Below are positions 8,030-62,754 of a stretch of DNA of 64,000 bases, piece by piece. A program made the position numbers and the translations under genes. The stretch's first letter is position 1; each line of letters begins with the position of its first letter. Source of the stretch: Podarcis vaucheri. Its lineage: Eukaryota. The stretch lies in NCBI GenBank assembly GCA_965113315.1, contig OZ220370.1. One strand, given 5' to 3'. Under the pieces are notes generated by a model, which was given only the letters and a program-made list of their open reading frames with translations, did no database searches and had not been told where the DNA came from.

Positions 8030-8096
8030 TGTTGGCTCAGAATAGCGTATAAATTAATCAAAGTAGTTCAGTGCACTTTTGTCCTCATAGCCAACA
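8030..8096 (-). ncRNA. SNORD54: Box C/D snoRNA U54 in RPS20 intron 2
   Basis: 8-bp terminal stem TGTTGGCT/AGCCAACA, box C variant ATGAGGA, box D CTGA, guide TATACGCTATT complementary to 18S rRNA AAUAGCGUAUA; ~80 nt upstream of the 3' splice site; RPS20 is the known U54 host. Confidence 0.95.
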
Positions 8097-10448: not shown

Positions 10449-10681
10449 CCGAAAGAGGGCCCGCCTCTACCCACGGAGGGCTTTTAATGAGGCATAAAGG
10501 AAAGAAGAACCGAGGAGAGCCACGACCTCGGAGCAGCTCGTGAGAGCGCACGCGCGAGGTGGGGGGGTTGGGGAGGGGGCCTTAGGCGCAACCGTTAAAT
10601 TCGAACGTCTCCCACATCCATGGCAACCCGTCGGCGCGAGGGCTCTTTCCCGCGCGACCCCTGAGGCCCAGTCTCCCTCAC

Positions 10682-10684
10682 CAT
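10682..10684 (-). CDS. RPS20: RPS20 coding exon 1 (ATG only)
   Basis: GCGGCC ATG|gtgagg; splices in frame to exon 2. Confidence 0.95.
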
Positions 10685-10789
10685 GGCCGCCGCGGAGCCT
10701 TCCTGACCGACTTATTCCTGGCCGAAGCGCGCGAGGCCCGGGGAACAGCGGTGAGTCAGGAAACAAGCGCCTCGCCGAGACACGGACGC

Positions 10790-10825
10790 AAAGAGGGCGG
10801 GTGGCGAGGCGGCGCGGGCTTTATA
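10790..10825 (-). promoter_or_regulatory. RPS20: RPS20 core promoter: TATA box and TCT/5'TOP initiator
   Basis: TATAAA at 10825-10820, pyrimidine tract CCCTCTTT at 10797-10790; 5'UTR runs from ~10795 to 10685. Confidence 0.85.
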
Positions 10826-11696
10826 GGCTCGCCGAGCCACACACGCCCCGCCCCTTTCTCCCCCCACTTCGCCCCGGAACCGATTCGGGTGGATGGATGG
10901 GGAGGAGAAGCGGCGAGGGCGAGGGCTGGGCCTGCGAAGCGAGGCAGGGGCGGAAGTTGTTCTTCAGGGCGGCGGCGGGTCGGGGTAGGGAGGGTAGCCG
11001 CCATGGCTGTGCGATGGGCTTTAGGCTTATGCCGGTAGCCGGGTCCTTTTCCCCGAGGGAAAGCGTAGGATCTCCCTTCTGTCATTTCCCCCTTTATTCC
11101 GGCAAGAAGGAAAGGAAACTCTAAATCCTTCCTTCTGAAATGTGGAATTTCCGATTGATCCAGAATAAGACACTCCCGCCCCCCTCCATCGAAGGGTAAA
11201 CATATACAGTAGTAGTGTACTCACAAGGCGTCTTCTGCTGTGGCTTTTGCTGCTCTGATTTGCTGCTCTGCAGTTTACCCAGGATGCCAAGCCTCGTCTG
11301 TCAAGTTAGAATTTGGCCCCGGAACCTCCCTTGCCCCCTTTTAAACTATTTATCTATATCTCTAGCTCCAGGCTGCCTTCCATTTCAGCAGTGATTGACT
11401 CCGATCAGCCCCGCTCATAGAATCAATATACTGTAATTGTAGAGATGGAAGGCACCTGTGTTAACCACGTTGCTGGAGTTAGGGGGAAGGAACCCCCACT
11501 GAAGCCGATGATGCTTAACGCCCAAACAAGCATGCATGGAATTACTCCATTGAGCGCTGGTTTTACTCCCTCAAATGCTCAGAGACCAAAGCTTTGTTTC
11601 AAAGATACTCTGGGTCAACCAATCTGTTTTAGAGTGATCGAACCCACAGCATTCTTAGACTTGCAGTCTTAAGACTTCCACTTACTTAGATGTAAT

Positions 11697-18062: not shown

Positions 18063-19082
18063 TTATACTATTAGAGACAGGGACTGAAGATTGTGAAGGA
18101 GAAGTTCTGCACTAGGACGCTCTGCTACATCAGCTCTCCAACAGCTTCCAATTATATTTTCAAGTCTTTGGCCAGTGGTTGATTCTCTAAACACAGCTGC
18201 AGTCAGAGAAGGGCGCAGGTTATAAGCTACAACAGAGTAGAGTACATACTGGCGCTCACCCGAATAAGGCTCTTGCTGTGTAACCATTTGCCAGAGGGTG
18301 ATGGCAAATGAGTAGATGTCTGCCTTGGGGTTGACTCGCTCACCTTTAAGGAGTTCAGGAGCACGGTGGGTGTATGTTCCCCCTTGTTGACAAAGTTGTG
18401 GGTCAGATGCAGCATTCTGTAGCTTTTGGGAACATCCAAAGTCTCCAATCTTGCAAACATTGTGTTCAGTGATGAATATGTTGGCAGGTTTCAAATCCAG
18501 ATGCACAATGAAATGTGAATGGAGAAACACTAAGCCTGCCATAATGTCACAGGAGTAGCCCAGACACTGAGCTATACTCAGCTGATCATCATTCTTTTTC
18601 GCTGTTATACAGCCAGTCCCATAGATAACATGGTCCAGAGTCCTATTTCCTACATACTCCATTATTATGGTGCCCAAACTATCCTGACTGCCAGGGGCAC
18701 ATGTGCTAGCAGCTACTATACGCACCACATTTTTGTGATCAAGGCGTGCTGCATTTAGTTCTGCCCAGAAGCTCTGCCGTGATGCCAAACGGTTCTTACT
18801 GCATTTTTTTACCTGCTTTACAGCCACTGTAGCTCCATGGTACGTAGCCTTGTAGACAGAACCAAAGCCACCAGAGCCTAGGGGGTGCAGCAGGCACAAC
18901 TGATCCCAGTCTATAGAACACCAAGCTACACGAGAGGGTAGCCGACGAGCCCTAGGCAACGGACCTTCCCCCAACTTTTCACGTTTGGCAGGAAACACCA
19001 AGGGACTACTACAGGGTCGTGTTTCCACAGATGGAGAAAATTCCAGATGGAGAAGACGACTATGTGGAAGAGGGGATGGCAT
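18063..19082 (-). CDS. MOS: Proto-oncogene Ser/Thr kinase c-Mos (oocyte maturation factor), single exon, 339 aa
   Basis: MPSP N-terminus, [47 protein letters not shown]; intronless; syntenic between RPS20 and PLAG1. Confidence 0.99.
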
Positions 19083-31635: not shown

Positions 31636-32899
31636 CTATTGGAAAGCTTGATGAAAACGTGGTAAGGTTGTGGTTGTGTTTAAACTGCTTGTGAAAGCTG
31701 CTGATAATGAATGCAAAGACCCAAGACCTATACCATTACCAGGGTCATGTGGATCTTGTGCCTGTGGAGGAAGCTGCGTCATAGATGAATGTGCTTCCTC
31801 TTGCGTGTAACTCATTCCAAGATTTCCTACAGAAACAGAAGGATTAAAAGGAGGTCCATTTACAGGTATAAAATTGAATAACTGAGAGAAGTCCAGTGAT
31901 GGGGTGCTTAGAGGTTCACTAATAGAAACTGAACTTTTCGAAAGGGAAACATCCCCAGATCCATCATCTAGTGGTCCTACTTGAGGATCCAACCCTAATT
32001 TAGATGAAGATGCTTGAGAATCTTGGGATGAAGAAGGCATACCACTTTGCAGTTCCATTAAGTAACTTTCAATTTCCCCTTTCAATGGCTGCTCTTTATC
32101 AGTCATAGAAACTGTATATGAGGTAGAACTGAGTGGATATTTTAGAGAGAGCTGGTGAGAAGGATGGACAGATTCCATATCTATTGGACAAGGCATTCCT
32201 AAAGGTAATGATGTGGCAACCATTTGGTGTGCAGATGTTGAGCTCTGCATGGACTGAATCTGAGTATTGTAGAGATTTAATTGCAAAGTGTTTGTAAATG
32301 GCTTTGATGTCAGTTCACTGGAAGATAAAGACATCACTGGAAGTAACTCGTCCTTTATAGGCACAGAAACATTGCAAGGAAATGGGTCTAGTAGATCCAT
32401 TGGCTCCGTTTTGACCTTCAGAAGTTCTTGGTTGTGACTTTTCTTCATATGCCGTGTTAGGTGATCCTTCCGGCCAAATCTCTGTGCGCAATACTGACAG
32501 AGGAAGTCCTTTCTTCCAGTGTGCACTACCATGTGTCTCCGGACATCCTTTCGGGTGTAAAACCGACGATCACAATGTTCACACTGGTGCTTTTTCTCCT
32601 TCACTCCACCTGATGATTTGCCTGCATGAGTTTTTAGGTGCTCCAGCAACACCCCTGTGCTTTCAAATGTCTGCAAACATACTTTACAGGTGAGGTCACC
32701 ACTTGTTGCAGCATGCAAAGCCAGGTGACGCTTAAACCCAAGCTTCGTGTTGTAGTTCTTTCCACATTCTTCACACTTAAAGGCCTCTTTATTGGGATTA
32801 TGTGTATGTAGGTGATTCTTTAGGTGATCTTTTCGATGAAACATTTTCTCACAATAATTACACTTGTGGGTTTTCTCAGGAGAATGAGTAGCCATATGC
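31636..32899 (-). CDS. PLAG1: PLAG1 zinc finger protein, last coding exon
   Basis: ttcaag|G CAT ATG GCT...; five C2H2 fingers (ZF3-7), SUMO motifs VKTE, IKDE, LKGE, Ser-rich activation domain, C-terminal TTTLPRFHQAFQ*; synteny with MOS. Confidence 0.98.
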
Positions 32900-33426: not shown

Positions 33427-33718
33427 NNNNNNNNNNNNNNNNNNNNNNNNNNNNNNNNNNNNNNNNNNNNNNNNNNNNNNNNNNNNNNNNNNNNNNNNNN
33501 NNNNNNNNNNNNNNNNNNNNNNNNNNNNNNNNNNNNNNNNNNNNNNNNNNNNNNNNNNNNNNNNNNNNNNNNNNNNNNNNNNNNNNNNNNNNNNNNNNNN
33601 NNNNNNNNNNNNNNNNNNNNNNNNNNNNNNNNNNNNNNNNNNNNNNNNNNNNNNNNNNNNNNNNNNNNNNNNNNNNNNNNNNNNNNNNNNNNNNNNNNNN
33701 NNNNNNNNNNNNNNNNNN
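33427..33718. other. 292-nt run of N (assembly gap or masked sequence)
   Basis: Directly visible. Confidence 1.
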
Positions 33719-33788
33719 CTCCACTAAATGATTTAGCTTTAGATGGCTTCTCAAGTTTCATGTGGTCGTTAAAGAAAGCAAAAGGGGA
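33430..33788 (-). CDS. PLAG1: PLAG1 first coding exon; only its first 70 nt (5'UTR) are visible, the start codon and ZF1-2 lie in the gap
   Basis: Strong acceptor ttttttttttccag|TCCCCTTTTGCTTTCTTTAACGACCACATGAAACTTGAGAAGCC matches my recollection of human exon 4; the lower boundary is inferred from the human exon length (~359 nt), not seen. Confidence 0.75.
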
Positions 33789-38148: not shown

Positions 38149-38250
38149 CTGGTGATGGAACGAAGAAAAACCTTCAGATTTTGGTCTTAACCAGTTCCAC
38201 TGACATGTCTAGGAGCAAACCAGAATCCAGTGCTTCCCATTTTTGCTGAT
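38149..38250 (-). other. PLAG1: PLAG1 non-coding 5' exon (human exon 3 equivalent), 102 nt, contains a uORF
   Basis: tttgtttttcag|ATCAGCAAAAATGGGAAG...CACCAG|gtgtgc; resembles the recalled human leader ATTGGCCAAAATGGGAAGGATTGGATTC. Confidence 0.8.
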
Positions 38251-49629: not shown

Positions 49630-50970
49630 GTTTTATAACCAAGTCTCTAACTCAGGAGAGTTCATCTGTAAGGCTCAAGAATGTGGACAAGGGGCTTGGA
49701 ACAGTCAGTGCAACCATTTGCACTCTGGATGATGCTTATGGAGTGCTCTTCGGCCCCATGAAACTTTCAATGTGGAGTTCCTCAGGATTCAATCCCCACC
49801 CTTAAACTACTGAAAACCACTGAGTGGGATTATCCAGAAGTTTGGAGTACATTGTCAGCAATTTGCTGATGACACACAGCTTTACTTCTCCTTTATATCT
49901 GTAGGTGCGACTGTGGATGTGCTGGACTGCCTTGATAAGGGACTGGGTAAGAGCCAACTTACTGAAGCTCAATCTAGATAAGACCAAGGCAATGTTAGTG
50001 GGTGGTTCCCTAGACCAGATGGAAGCAGTGGACACACCGCTGTCACTTGAGGCTCAGGTGGTCTTGGAGTGCCTTCCATCAGTTTCAGCTAGTGGCCCAG
50101 TGCACCTCTATTTGGACAGGAATAGCCAAACTTCTGTTGTCTATGCTCTGGTAAACTCAAGGTTAGATTACAATGGGCTGCCTTTGAAGGTGAATTGGAA
50201 ATTTCAGCTGGGGCAGAATTTGGTGGCTAGGTTGTTCACCAGGGTAAGAAGGTCTGAGCATGTTACAACAATCCTGTCCCAACTGCACTGGCTGCCAGTT
50301 AGTTTCCCAGCCCATTTCAAAGTGCTGGTTTTTACCTATACAGTCTTACCTCGGGCTGAAGTAGCTTCGGGCTAAGTATTTTCAGGTTACGCGCTGCGGT
50401 GATTTGGACGTAACAGAGCGTGTTACTTCTGGGTTTTGCCGCTCGTGCAGACGGTCAAAATGATATCACGCGCATGCGCAGAAGCGGCAAATCGCGCGCA
50501 GCCCGCAGGTTGCGTCCGCTTCTGGATGTGAACGGGGCTCCGGAACGGATCCCATTTGCATCCAGAGGTACCACTGTAAAGCCTTAAATAGATCAGGACT
50601 GCAATACTTCAAAGACCACTCTCTCCCCATATGAACTGGCATGGACCCTGAGATCATCCTCTGATGCCCTTCTTCATGAGCCTCCTCCACGCAAGGTCTG
50701 GAGAGTGGCAACACGAGAACAGGCCTTTTCTGTGATGGCTCCCCATTTGTGGAATGCTCTTCCCAGAGAATCTGGCACCTTCAATACATTTCTTTGGACA
50801 CCGGGCAAAAAAGTTTCTCTATAACCAGTCCTTTGGGTGATTAAATGTGTTTGTGGAAGGCAGAATTATTGGGTTTTAAAAATTATGTATTGTTGTCATT
50901 TTGTATTTTTATGTTATGAACCACCATGTGTTCTTCAGATGAAGGGCTGTATACTAATAAAATAAAAACA
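49630..50970 (+). mobile_element. Decayed L2 LINE (RT C-terminus and 3'UTR)
   Basis: GVPQ(G/D)S, QQFADDTQLYF, LKLNLDKTK, ALVNSRLDY, LHWLPV...FKVLVFTY|KALN; boundaries approximate. Confidence 0.88.
50341..50576. mobile_element. CpG-rich mariner-type MITE inserted in the L2
   Basis: TA|CAGTCTTACCTCGGG...CCAGAGGTACCACTG|TA; removing it restores TTT ACC TAT AAA GCC TTA AAT. Confidence 0.85.
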
Positions 50971-60849: not shown

Positions 60850-61322
60850 TCACTATATTCAAAGCACAAGCTCCGGAGCTCGGGGGGGGGGGGGAGAGAG
60901 AGAAGAGAGAGACTCCGAGCGAGGAAAGCGAGGTTGGGGGGGGGGCTGGGGGCTTCTCAAAAAAGTTTCTGCCTCCCCGTTTGTATAACAAGAAACGAGG
61001 GGGAAGAAGAAGGGGGGTGCGATCCTCTCAGTGAAAACCTCACTGAAGGAGTTGGGGGGGGGAGCGGAGGAGAGGAGAAACTAAGTCCGAAAGCTGAGGA
61101 AAGCGAGGCTTTCTTTCGAGGGGCTGCTCCTGGGGACCCCCGCGAGAAGCGCGACGCAGCCCAGGAGTGCAAGGGAAGGAGATGAAGCCGCACAAACTTT
61201 CCCTCATCGCTGCCGCTCCGCTCTCCCCCCTTCTCCTCCTCCTCCCCCTTCAGAATTTAAATAACCCTAATATTTCCCTGCTGAACCCCGGCTCCTGACC
61301 CCCAAACCCGCAGCAGACTCAC

Positions 61323-61490
61323 CGCGGGAGCCTCAGCATCCCCTCAGCGCCCTCTTCCCGCCTTTTACAGGGTTCTCCGATTTTTCTGTAATTTTTTCCC
61401 CATATTTCGGGCTGGACGCGGCGGGCCTGGAAATTGTTTGCTTTCCCCTCTTTCCAGCAGCCATTGTAGTGTATGCGCTGCGGTGCAGCT
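61323..61490 (-). other. PLAG1: PLAG1 exon 1 (leader, contains a 43-aa uORF); TSS approximate
   Basis: GCAGCGCATACACTACAATGGCTGCTGGAAAGAGG...CCCGCG|gtgagt; matches the recalled human PLAG1 exon 1; canonical donor. Confidence 0.88.
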
Positions 61491-61819
61491 CAGCCTGCCG
61501 CACACGCCGCGCCCACACCGCCAGCCGCCCACACGCGCCGCGGGTTGGACACCTCCCCCTGTCACTCAGCCCTTTGGCCGCACCCTGGAGGCGGCCACTT
61601 CGGGACTCGCGGCTCGCCCCGTTGGTAGGACGGGACGCCGCTCCGGGAAGGGAGAGGAGGAACCGCGCGCGGATTGGCCCGGCGGCGGCGGGCTCCGAGC
61701 TGTCTTTCAGAGCGCCTCGGCGAGAGCGATTGGGCGCCGGGCCTGTCAGTTTCGGCAGGGCTGCGGGGCAGTAACGGGGTAGGCTGCGCCGCTTATAAGG
61801 TGGCTGCCCAAGCCGCTGA

Positions 61820-61880
61820 CGTCTTTCGAATTGGAAGCGAGTCCCGAGCCCGCGAGTCGGTTTCCCTCACGGCGGCTGAG
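61820..61880 (+). other. CHCHD7: Probable non-coding exon 1 of CHCHD7; TSS approximate
   Basis: GGCTGAG|GTGAGT donor at 61880/61881, head-to-head with PLAG1. The name rests on synteny only; no CHCHD7 coding exon recognised in the window. Confidence 0.6.
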
Positions 61881-62485
61881 GTGAGTGTCGCCTCCCGAGG
61901 AGCCGCCTGGTCGCCGGGCGCCTGGTCCGGCCTCGCTGTGGCAGCGCCAACCTCCCGCCCGCTCTGAAGGGCAGCGACAACGTCCCGCCCGCTCCCTCCG
62001 GCGCCTGGCTTCGTTGCCGGGCGTGCGAGGCGGGAACGGAGCGCGGCGTCAGGCCCCGCGGCTCCACGCGGAGCAGCCCCCGAGAGCTGGCGCTAGGCTA
62101 GAGGCTTGTGGAGGGCGGGCCGGGGCGGCGGCGGCTGCAGGCCCGTGCAAGGCGCCCGTGGGTGCGCCCAGGTGCGCCTCCTGAGACTGCTCCGCCCATC
62201 GCTGCCCTTTCTGTGGCTGGGCCAGGAAGCGCTTCCTTCTCCTTTTTGCCCTCGGTGGCTCCCGACATGGCAGCTGAAGTGGGTGCGCGGGTGTGGGTGT
62301 GTAAGAGACATGCGGCATGTTGTAGCTCCCATCCCTTATAGCTAGCTGCTGCTCCAGGGCTCGGGGTGGGTTGGGCGCTGCAGCATCCACACCCTCCAGC
62401 CCACCCGCCGGGTGAGACTGGAACTAAAGAGATAAGGATGGGGGGCTTCGACGTCAAATCTAAAGCGGTTTGGCTCCCCCGCCCC

Positions 62486-62511
62486 TTCATTCATTCATTC
62501 ATTCATTCATT
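62486..62511. repeat. (CATT)n microsatellite
   Basis: About 6 units visible. Confidence 0.9.
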
Positions 62512-62754
62512 TTTCTTTTTGCATCTTATGTTGCATCGACTCTTTTCTGTTCCAACTCTGGCATCTGTAGAGACTTGAGTTCTACTGTTTCAGTAAATGG
62601 TAGGGAAAGCAGCTTTGCTGAGCCTGTGGGCCTCCATGAAAGCACTTGGTTGGAAAGGGACAGTACTTAGATTGGAGGGGGGGGGATCCTCCAGATTGGC
62701 AGTCTTATTTTATATGTATTCTGTAGCATGATGTTGATACAACAATAGTGCATT

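What the first reader, a model, noticed from the sequence alone, without database searches (positions are those of the whole stretch)
61333..61464. 43-aa uORF in PLAG1 exon 1 that looks conserved from lizard to human: candidate microprotein or peptide-dependent translational switch
Seen: an ATG in strong Kozak context (ACAATGG) near the 5' end of exon 1 opens MAAGKRGKQTISRPAASSPKYGEKITEKSENPVKGGKRALRGC*, which stops 9 nt before the donor. From memory, the human leader encodes MAAGKRRKETISRPAASSPKYEKKIIRNSAGGVEAADGPEGGC*: also 43 codons, near-identical first 21 aa, and the same GC-stop ending despite a diverged second half. Inference: frame and length preservation suggests selection on translation. 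Established: exon 1 is replaced in PLAG1 promoter-swapping fusions (e.g. CTNNB1-PLAG1), so those would also delete this uORF. The ATG overlaps a YY1-like motif, an alternative cause of the conservation.
Basis: partly seen in the sequence, partly recalled or inferred. Interest (0 to 1): 0.82.

Follow-up and report, generated by a model that had tools for sequence, protein, structure and literature searches.

The report
Conserved upstream ORF in PLAG1 leader
The first, non-coding exon of the growth and tumour gene PLAG1 carries a short upstream reading frame whose start and first ~27 codons are conserved across distant vertebrates, but the pattern looks more like a conserved leader element with a translational brake than a conserved small protein.

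Summary
The ORF is real. On the minus strand an ATG at 61464 (context acaATGg) opens 43 codons ending at TGA 61333, 10 nt (not 9) before a GTGAGT donor. The locus is PLAG1: snoU54, MOS, PLAG1 zinc-finger exon, and a CpG-island divergent promoter. A 43-codon ORF is not unusual here by itself (12% of shuffles), so the claim rests on conservation.

Database ORF translations from other organisms keep the ATG and about 27 N-terminal codons. Two lizard-like and two mammal-like sequences are also 43 codons. A third lineage of seven sequences has 29, 32 or 53 codons, with a compensated frameshift among sequences that are at least 90% identical. Length preservation is therefore not general.

In-frame conservation also runs about 7 codons upstream of the ATG. 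Replacements are no more conservative than random single-base changes. GC3 (0.55) does not follow the flanking GC (0.74). The variable part is the C-terminus, the opposite of arrest peptides.

Best reading (0.45): a nucleotide-conserved leader block whose strong uAUG opens a peptide-independent repressive uORF. It is removed, with exon 1, by promoter-swap fusions.

Transcription and translation were not tested. This is a new member of a known kind, of moderate interest.

The parts
61333..61464 (-). uORF1: ATG, 43 codons, TGA, with strong initiation context acaATGg
61384..61485 (-). Conserved block: about 7 in-frame codons upstream of the ATG plus uORF codons 1-27. 18 of 27 columns are invariant in 10 non-mammal-like sequences, with no indel inside the ORF part and one 3-nt indel just upstream of the ATG.
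61333..61383 (-). Variable tail of uORF1 (codons 28-43 plus stop). Sequence, frame and length are not kept in the third lineage, and the tail evolves fast among close relatives.
61317..61322 (-). Predicted exon 1 splice donor GTGAGT; the exon ends at 61323, 10 nt after the uORF stop
   Evidence: sequence only; no RNA evidence
61465..61790 (-). Promoter and untranslated 5' part of exon 1 (GC 0.74). The TSS is not mapped. CCAAT boxes in minus orientation lie at 61673-61677 and 61729-61733.
   Evidence: read by eye
61793..61880 (+). Divergent first exon on the other strand, in the position of CHCHD7. It has TTATAAG at 61793-61799, TGACGTC at 61817-61823, and a GTGAGT donor after 61880. It has no ATG.
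   Evidence: The head-to-head PLAG1/CHCHD7 arrangement comes from PMC9405559 and PMC5359603. Gene identity here is inferred from position only.
38149..38250 (-). Predicted 102-nt leader exon 2, with a 17-codon uORF2 (38240-38187, context aaaATGg). By coordinates its ATG lies 20 nt after the uORF1 stop in the spliced leader.
   Evidence: note s1-850625
33719..33788 (-). Start of the next predicted exon (acceptor AG at 33790-33789). It runs into the N run at 33427-33718, which was left as it is. The third uATG lies at 33761.
   Evidence: note s1-850626
31636..32895 (-). PLAG1 last coding exon (C2H2 zinc fingers plus C-terminal part)

Best explanation
The 5' end of PLAG1's non-coding first exon holds a block of about 100 nt that is conserved at the nucleotide level across vertebrates and contains a strong-context uAUG. 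Scanning ribosomes would start there, translate a short basic, disordered-looking peptide of no selected sequence, and stop inside exon 1. This lowers initiation at the PLAG1 start codon. Two further uATGs in exons 2 and 3 would add to the effect, and a stop upstream of several exon junctions may expose the mRNA to NMD. The conserved features would be the AUG, its context and the surrounding RNA or DNA, not the peptide. Shown here: the ORF, its context, conservation of the ATG and first ~27 codons, and variability of the end. Inferred: that the ATG lies in the mRNA, that it is translated, and that it represses. Fusions that replace exon 1 would lose this brake.
For: The ATG is kept, in strong context, in all 11 related ORF translations. 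The ORF always closes after 29-53 codons. The end is variable and the conserved part is not bounded by the ATG. Replacements are not conservative. GC and GC3 of the ORF (0.53, 0.55) lie far below the surrounding CpG island (0.74), as if all codon positions were held. A consensus donor follows 10 nt after the stop, and two more uATGs sit in the predicted leader exons. The divergent exon about 330 bp upstream places the PLAG1 TSS between 61465 and 61790, so the ATG should lie in the leader (PMC9405559). Fusions join the partner's exon 1 to PLAG1 exon 2 (PMC9405559).
Against: No orthologous DNA could be fetched (closed; empty), so synonymous and non-synonymous rates were not measured. The ATG overlaps a YY1-like core (ATGGC), which could explain its conservation without translation. 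At 43 codons the uORF is rather long for efficient reinitiation. The taxon of the third lineage is unknown, and a leader of a paralogue is not formally excluded.
Confidence: 0.45

Rival explanations
1. It is purely a DNA-level promoter-proximal element, for example a YY1-like or other factor site just downstream of the TSS of the PLAG1/CHCHD7 bidirectional promoter. The open frame is incidental and has no translational role.
For: Conservation crosses the ATG upstream. Replacements are as radical as random. GC3 is not relaxed towards the flank. A 3-nt indel occurs just outside the ORF. The ORF length is within chance for this leader. The promoter is known to be bidirectional and to carry functional variants in cattle (PMC5359603). 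Many small libraries from 13 studies hold the stretch, which might mean it is a capture target; this is a guess.
Against: In the most divergent sequence (P0005) upstream similarity almost stops at the ATG while the 27 codons downstream stay conserved. No stop or frameshift occurs in codons 1-27 in any of the 11 sequences. A strong-context AUG in a leader is normally used by scanning ribosomes (established knowledge).
Confidence: 0.28
2. The peptide matters. Its conserved N-terminal ~27 residues act either as a microprotein or as a nascent chain that tunes ribosome progress and so PLAG1 translation.
For: 18 of 27 N-terminal columns are invariant across lizard-like and third-lineage sequences, and 16 of 27 when the mammal-like sequence is read by eye. 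No indel occurs in that part. Lizard-like and mammal-like ORFs have the same 43-codon length.
Against: The length is 29, 32 or 53 codons in the third lineage, with a compensated frameshift among close relatives. Known arrest peptides conserve the C-terminal part near the stop, and here that part varies. Replacements such as S12F, P19K, G22E and T26I are radical. The composition is 11 basic and 3 acidic residues, rich in G, A, S, P and K with almost no hydrophobic residues, which suggests no fold. There is no Pfam family and no paper on it.
Confidence: 0.15
3. It is a chance ORF in a GC-rich leader with no function, and the apparent conservation comes from a few database ORFs.
For: 12% of shuffles give an ORF this long. 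Only 11 related translations were found, from about three lineages.
Against: The HMMER hits have E-values from 6e-21 to 4e-4 against 1.84 billion proteins. They share the ATG position and a gap-free 27-codon block. That is far more than chance for non-coding DNA of distant lineages.
Confidence: 0.07

Closest known systems
Repressive uORFs in leaders of proto-oncogenes and transcription factors (generic scanning-model uORFs, for example in the MDM2, HER2 and CEBP leaders; from my own knowledge)
   Same: It has a strong-context uAUG near the 5' end and a stop within the leader. There are several uATGs before the main start. The host gene is dosage-sensitive, and the start codon is conserved.
   Different: The first ~27 codons are unusually conserved and the conservation spills upstream of the AUG. 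No translation or reporter data exist for it.
Conserved-peptide uORFs and ribosome arrest peptides (AMD1 MAGDIS, fungal arginine attenuator peptide, plant CPuORFs; from my own knowledge)
   Same: It is a short uORF with a peptide that looks conserved over long evolutionary distances.
   Different: Those conserve the C-terminal residues next to the stop or stall site and keep their length. Here the C-terminus and the length vary and the N-terminus is the conserved part.
YY1-type motifs just downstream of the TSS that contain an ATG (consensus AAnATGGCG; from my own knowledge)
   Same: The core ATGGC sits at the uAUG, inside a CpG-island bidirectional promoter.
   Different: It is only a partial match (acaATGGCt), and the conserved block of about 100 nt is far longer than one site. 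Binding was not tested.
uORF-encoded microproteins (for example MIEF1-MP, ASNSD1-uORF; from my own knowledge)
   Same: It has an AUG-initiated uORF of tens of codons with cross-species conservation.
   Different: There is no evidence of a stable product. The composition looks disordered, and only part of the ORF is conserved.

Membership tests
uORF (upstream open reading frame of an mRNA leader) | AUG lies in the mature 5' leader, upstream of the main start codon | tested here: inconclusive
   The ATG is 142 nt upstream of a consensus donor in the CpG-island first exon of PLAG1, and the divergent exon lies about 330 bp further up. The TSS is not mapped and no RNA reads are available.
uORF (upstream open reading frame of an mRNA leader) | In-frame stop before the main coding sequence | tested here: met
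   TGA at 61335-61333, inside predicted exon 1
uORF (upstream open reading frame of an mRNA leader) | Ribosome initiation or occupancy at the uAUG | not testable with these tools
Evolutionarily conserved uORF | Start codon kept at the same position in orthologues | tested here: met
   All 11 related ORF translations have Met at the aligned position
Conserved-peptide uORF / arrest peptide | Length and frame preserved across orthologues | tested here: not met
   43 codons in the lizard-like and mammal-like sequences, but 29, 32 and 53 in the third lineage, with a compensated frameshift within one cluster of at least 90% identity
Conserved-peptide uORF / arrest peptide | Conserved C-terminal residues next to the stop or stall site | tested here: not met
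   The C-terminal 13-16 residues vary even among the three lizard-like sequences and are unrelated in the third lineage
Conserved-peptide uORF / arrest peptide | Purifying selection on the peptide (dN/dS below 1, third positions faster) | not testable with these tools
   No orthologous DNA was obtainable (closed, empty). Indirect signs point the other way.
Microprotein | Stable translated product detected, or a foldable or membrane domain | tested here: inconclusive
   No Pfam match. The composition is 11 K/R and 3 E with few hydrophobic residues. No structure prediction or proteomics was done.
YY1 binding site | Match to the consensus AAnATGGCG and occupancy by YY1 | tested here: inconclusive
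   The core ATGGC is present and the flanks match partly (read by eye). No matrix scan or ChIP data were available.

The most novel reading that the evidence does not exclude
The first ~27 residues encoded by the PLAG1 exon 1 uORF form a vertebrate-wide functional peptide, either a nascent-chain regulator of PLAG1 translation or a small basic nuclear microprotein. Every promoter-swap fusion in PLAG1-driven tumours would lose it, so those fusions would deregulate PLAG1 in translation as well as in transcription.
Probability: 0.12. Interest if true: 0.72.

Novelty: new member of a known kind. Interest (0 to 1): 0.4.

Why it matters
PLAG1 is a dosage-sensitive growth regulator. It underlies stature QTL in livestock and acts through IGF2. 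It is also an oncogene activated by promoter swapping that always discards exon 1 (PMC9405559, PMC5359603). If the conserved uAUG in exon 1 is a translational brake, fusions would remove a layer of post-transcriptional control, and variants in exon 1 could affect growth traits. No paper in the searched library links PLAG1 to a uORF. The evidence here shows only conservation, not function, and it argues against the more exciting microprotein reading.

Tried and rejected
- **Contig look-up.** No dN/dS or codon-position test was possible.
- **Metagenome DNA scan.** A pattern for codons 1-11 with free wobble positions found 0 matches.
- **Reads.** For the same reason protein-atlas search, structure prediction and PDB searches of the peptide were not run.
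- **Flank-only word search** (window:61444-61695:-) found only P0001 again.
- **Rfam** on the promoter and exon gave nothing above noise. The leader RNA fold has z = -2.0, which is weak.
- **Bacterial promoter/terminator scan** is irrelevant for this genome.
- **P0004 and P0008** are repeat proteins and spurious hits.
- **P0002 and P0003** I take for human or primate. They were seen in tool output and compared by eye only. They were not searched, aligned or used further.
- **Literature.** Searches pairing PLAG1 with uORF, upstream open reading frame, Ribo-seq and microprotein found nothing specific.
- **No spliced leader was joined or searched.** Distances across introns were computed from coordinates only. 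The N run at 33427-33718 was left unfilled.

Full report
**1. What is there**

On the minus strand an ATG at 61464-61462 opens a frame of 43 sense codons (window:61336-61464:-). It ends at TGA 61335-61333.
- The context is acaATGg, with A at -3 and G at +4.
- After the stop come 10 nt (61332-61323), then a consensus donor GTGAGT (61322-61317).
- Two other ATGs in the putative exon open only 12 and at least 5 codons.

**2. Which gene**

- The minus-strand exon at 31636-32895 carries C2H2 zinc fingers.
- Its best named relatives are 'zinc finger protein PLAG1': 91% in echidna and 85-87% in frogs, mammals and coelacanth. PLAGL2 reaches only 54-65%.
- MOS lies at 18063-19082 (-). snoU54, hosted by RPS20 in mammals (my own knowledge), lies at 8030-8093 (-).
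- The region 60.2-62.5 kb is a CpG island with GC up to 0.72.
- About 330 bp upstream of the ATG, on the other strand, a short ATG-less exon ends at 61880|GTGAGT. It is preceded by TTATAAG and TGACGTC.
- This fits the head-to-head PLAG1/CHCHD7 pair, about 500 bp apart in human, with a shared bidirectional promoter (PMC9405559; PMC5359603). CHCHD7 coding exons are outside the window, so that name is inferred from position only.
- The label 'lizard' was not verified.

Predicted leader exons, from sequence only:
- Exon 1 ends at 61323.
- Exon 2 is 38250-38149 (102 nt) and holds a 17-codon uORF in context aaaATGg (note s1-850625).
- The next exon starts at 33788 and runs into an N run at 33427-33718, which I left unfilled (note s1-850626).
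- By coordinates, the uORF2 ATG lies 20 nt after the uORF1 stop in the spliced leader.

**3. Is the ORF more than chance?**

Not by itself. 12% of shuffles of the 238-nt leader contain a closed ATG ORF of at least 43 codons. The case rests on conservation.

**4. Relatives**

Pfam gives nothing for the peptide. The word search found two ORFs:
- P0001 is 93% identical, from a Logan assembly.
- P0002 is 58% identical, ungapped over all 43 codons, from metaclust.

I therefore take it, and its near-twin P0003, for human or primate. I did not save, align or search them further.

The HMMER search of 1.84 billion representatives used window:61336-61482:-. The cluster look-up followed. Together they added:
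- P0009, which is lizard-like.
- A third lineage of unknown taxon: P0005, P0010 and P0007 from Logan contigs, and P0006, P0011, P0012 and P0013 from NCBI genome contigs of 200-500 kb.
- P0004 and P0008, which are repeat proteins and spurious.

**5. Pattern of conservation**

| Group | Sequences | Codons from the ATG |
|---|---|---|
| Window and lizard-like | window, P0001, P0009 | 43 each |
| Mammal-like (by eye only) | P0002, P0003 | 43 each |
| Third lineage | P0005, P0010, P0007, P0011 | 32 each |
| Third lineage | P0013 | 29 |
| Third lineage | P0006, P0012 | 53 each |

- (a) All sequences have Met at the same position. The first 27 codons align without gaps, and 18 of 27 columns are invariant among the 10 non-mammal-like sequences.
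- (b) After about codon 28, sequence, frame and length diverge. P0006 and P0012 differ by a locally compensated frameshift, and P0006, P0011, P0012 and P0013 belong to one cluster of at least 90% identity.
- (c) Among the three lizard-like sequences, 4 of the last 13 residues vary and none of the first 30.
- (d) The in-frame translation upstream of the ATG is also conserved for about 7 codons in 8 of 10 sequences, with one 3-nt indel. In P0005 and P0010 this upstream similarity is mostly lost.

The conserved unit is therefore a block of about 100 nt (about 61485-61384). It is not bounded by the ORF at either end.

**6. Peptide or nucleotides?**

A dN/dS test was therefore impossible.

Indirect tests all point away from selection on the peptide:
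- The 10 replacements seen in codons 1-28 have mean BLOSUM62 -0.8. All possible single-base non-synonymous changes average -0.47, and 79% of random draws are at least as conservative.
- Nine of the ten replacements need only one base change, and five of those nine hit second codon positions.
- The ORF has GC 0.53 and GC3 0.55, while the 236 nt upstream have GC 0.74. Third positions have not drifted to the local composition.
- The peptide has 11 basic and 3 acidic residues, is rich in G, A, S, P and K, and has almost no hydrophobic residues.
- In known arrest-peptide uORFs the conserved part is the C-terminus next to the stop (my own knowledge). Here it is the reverse.

**7. Expression**

- 20 runs from 13 studies and several organisms hold the stretch, but none is on record as RNA.
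- So there is no evidence on the TSS, splicing or translation.
- From then on no letters of 61399-61443 were sent to any search tool. Later searches used other coordinates. Local scripts ran on the closed machine only.

**8. Literature**

- No full-text paper links PLAG1 with a uORF, upstream open reading frame, Ribo-seq uORFs or a microprotein.
- Promoter swapping breaks in the non-coding 5' part and joins the partner's exon 1 to PLAG1 exon 2 (PMC9405559).

**9. Reading**

| Reading | Confidence |
|---|---|
| Nucleotide-conserved leader block with a strong uAUG that opens a peptide-independent repressive uORF | 0.45 |
| DNA-only promoter-proximal element, for example YY1-like (the core ATGGC overlaps the ATG) | 0.28 |
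| Peptide-dependent switch or microprotein | 0.15 |
| Chance | 0.07 |

In the best reading, two further uATGs add to the repression, and NMD coupling is possible because the stop lies upstream of later exon junctions. That the ATG is transcribed, translated and repressive is inferred from the scanning model and the gene layout. It is not shown.

**10. Verdict**

This is a new member of a known kind (a conserved uORF in an oncogene leader), of moderate interest.

Noticed in passing
window 8030-8093 (-): C/D-box snoRNA snoU54 (Rfam RF01277, 66 bits). In mammals it sits in an intron of RPS20. The GC-rich ORF-dense stretch at about 10467-11124 may be the RPS20 promoter CpG island. The gene order RPS20, MOS, PLAG1, CHCHD7 appears to be kept.
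   Followed up: partly
window 18063-19082 (-): An intact single-exon MOS kinase ORF of 339 aa (Pkinase, E = 2e-45).
   Followed up: partly
window 33427-33718: A 292-nt N run covers most of the predicted exon that should hold the PLAG1 start codon. The third uATG at 33761 (note s1-850626) cannot be judged because its frame runs into the Ns.
   Followed up: no
window 38149-38250 (-): A 102-nt leader exon with good acceptor and donor sites and a 17-codon uORF in strong context. Its ATG is only 20 nt after the uORF1 stop in the spliced leader. Ribosomes that have just finished uORF1 would probably skip it, a layout reminiscent of delayed reinitiation.
   Followed up: partly
window 61673-61677, 61729-61733, 61793-61799, 61817-61823: Two CCAAT boxes in PLAG1 orientation lie 56 bp apart. 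A TATA-like TTATAAG and a CRE-like TGACGTC sit just before the divergent plus-strand exon. These are motifs read by eye, untested.
   Followed up: no
window 49905-50375 (+): A 156-aa ORF that looks like the C-terminal part of a retrotransposon (LINE-type) reverse transcriptase ORF, inside PLAG1 intron 1. It was not searched.
   Followed up: no
window 62484-62512 (+): A (TTCA)n microsatellite at the edge of the CpG island.
   Followed up: no
(runs X1-X14): Fourteen small libraries (41-296 million letters) from ten coded organisms hold 56-78% of the sampled words of exon 1. This looks like target-capture data and would fit an ultraconserved-element-type locus, but that is a guess.
   Followed up: no
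No squamate, bird or turtle PLAG1 appears among the 120 best named hits, although squamate PLAGL2 does. The closest named PLAG1 is from a monotreme (91%). This is probably an effect of clustering or withholding in the database, and it left the window's taxon unverified.
   Followed up: no
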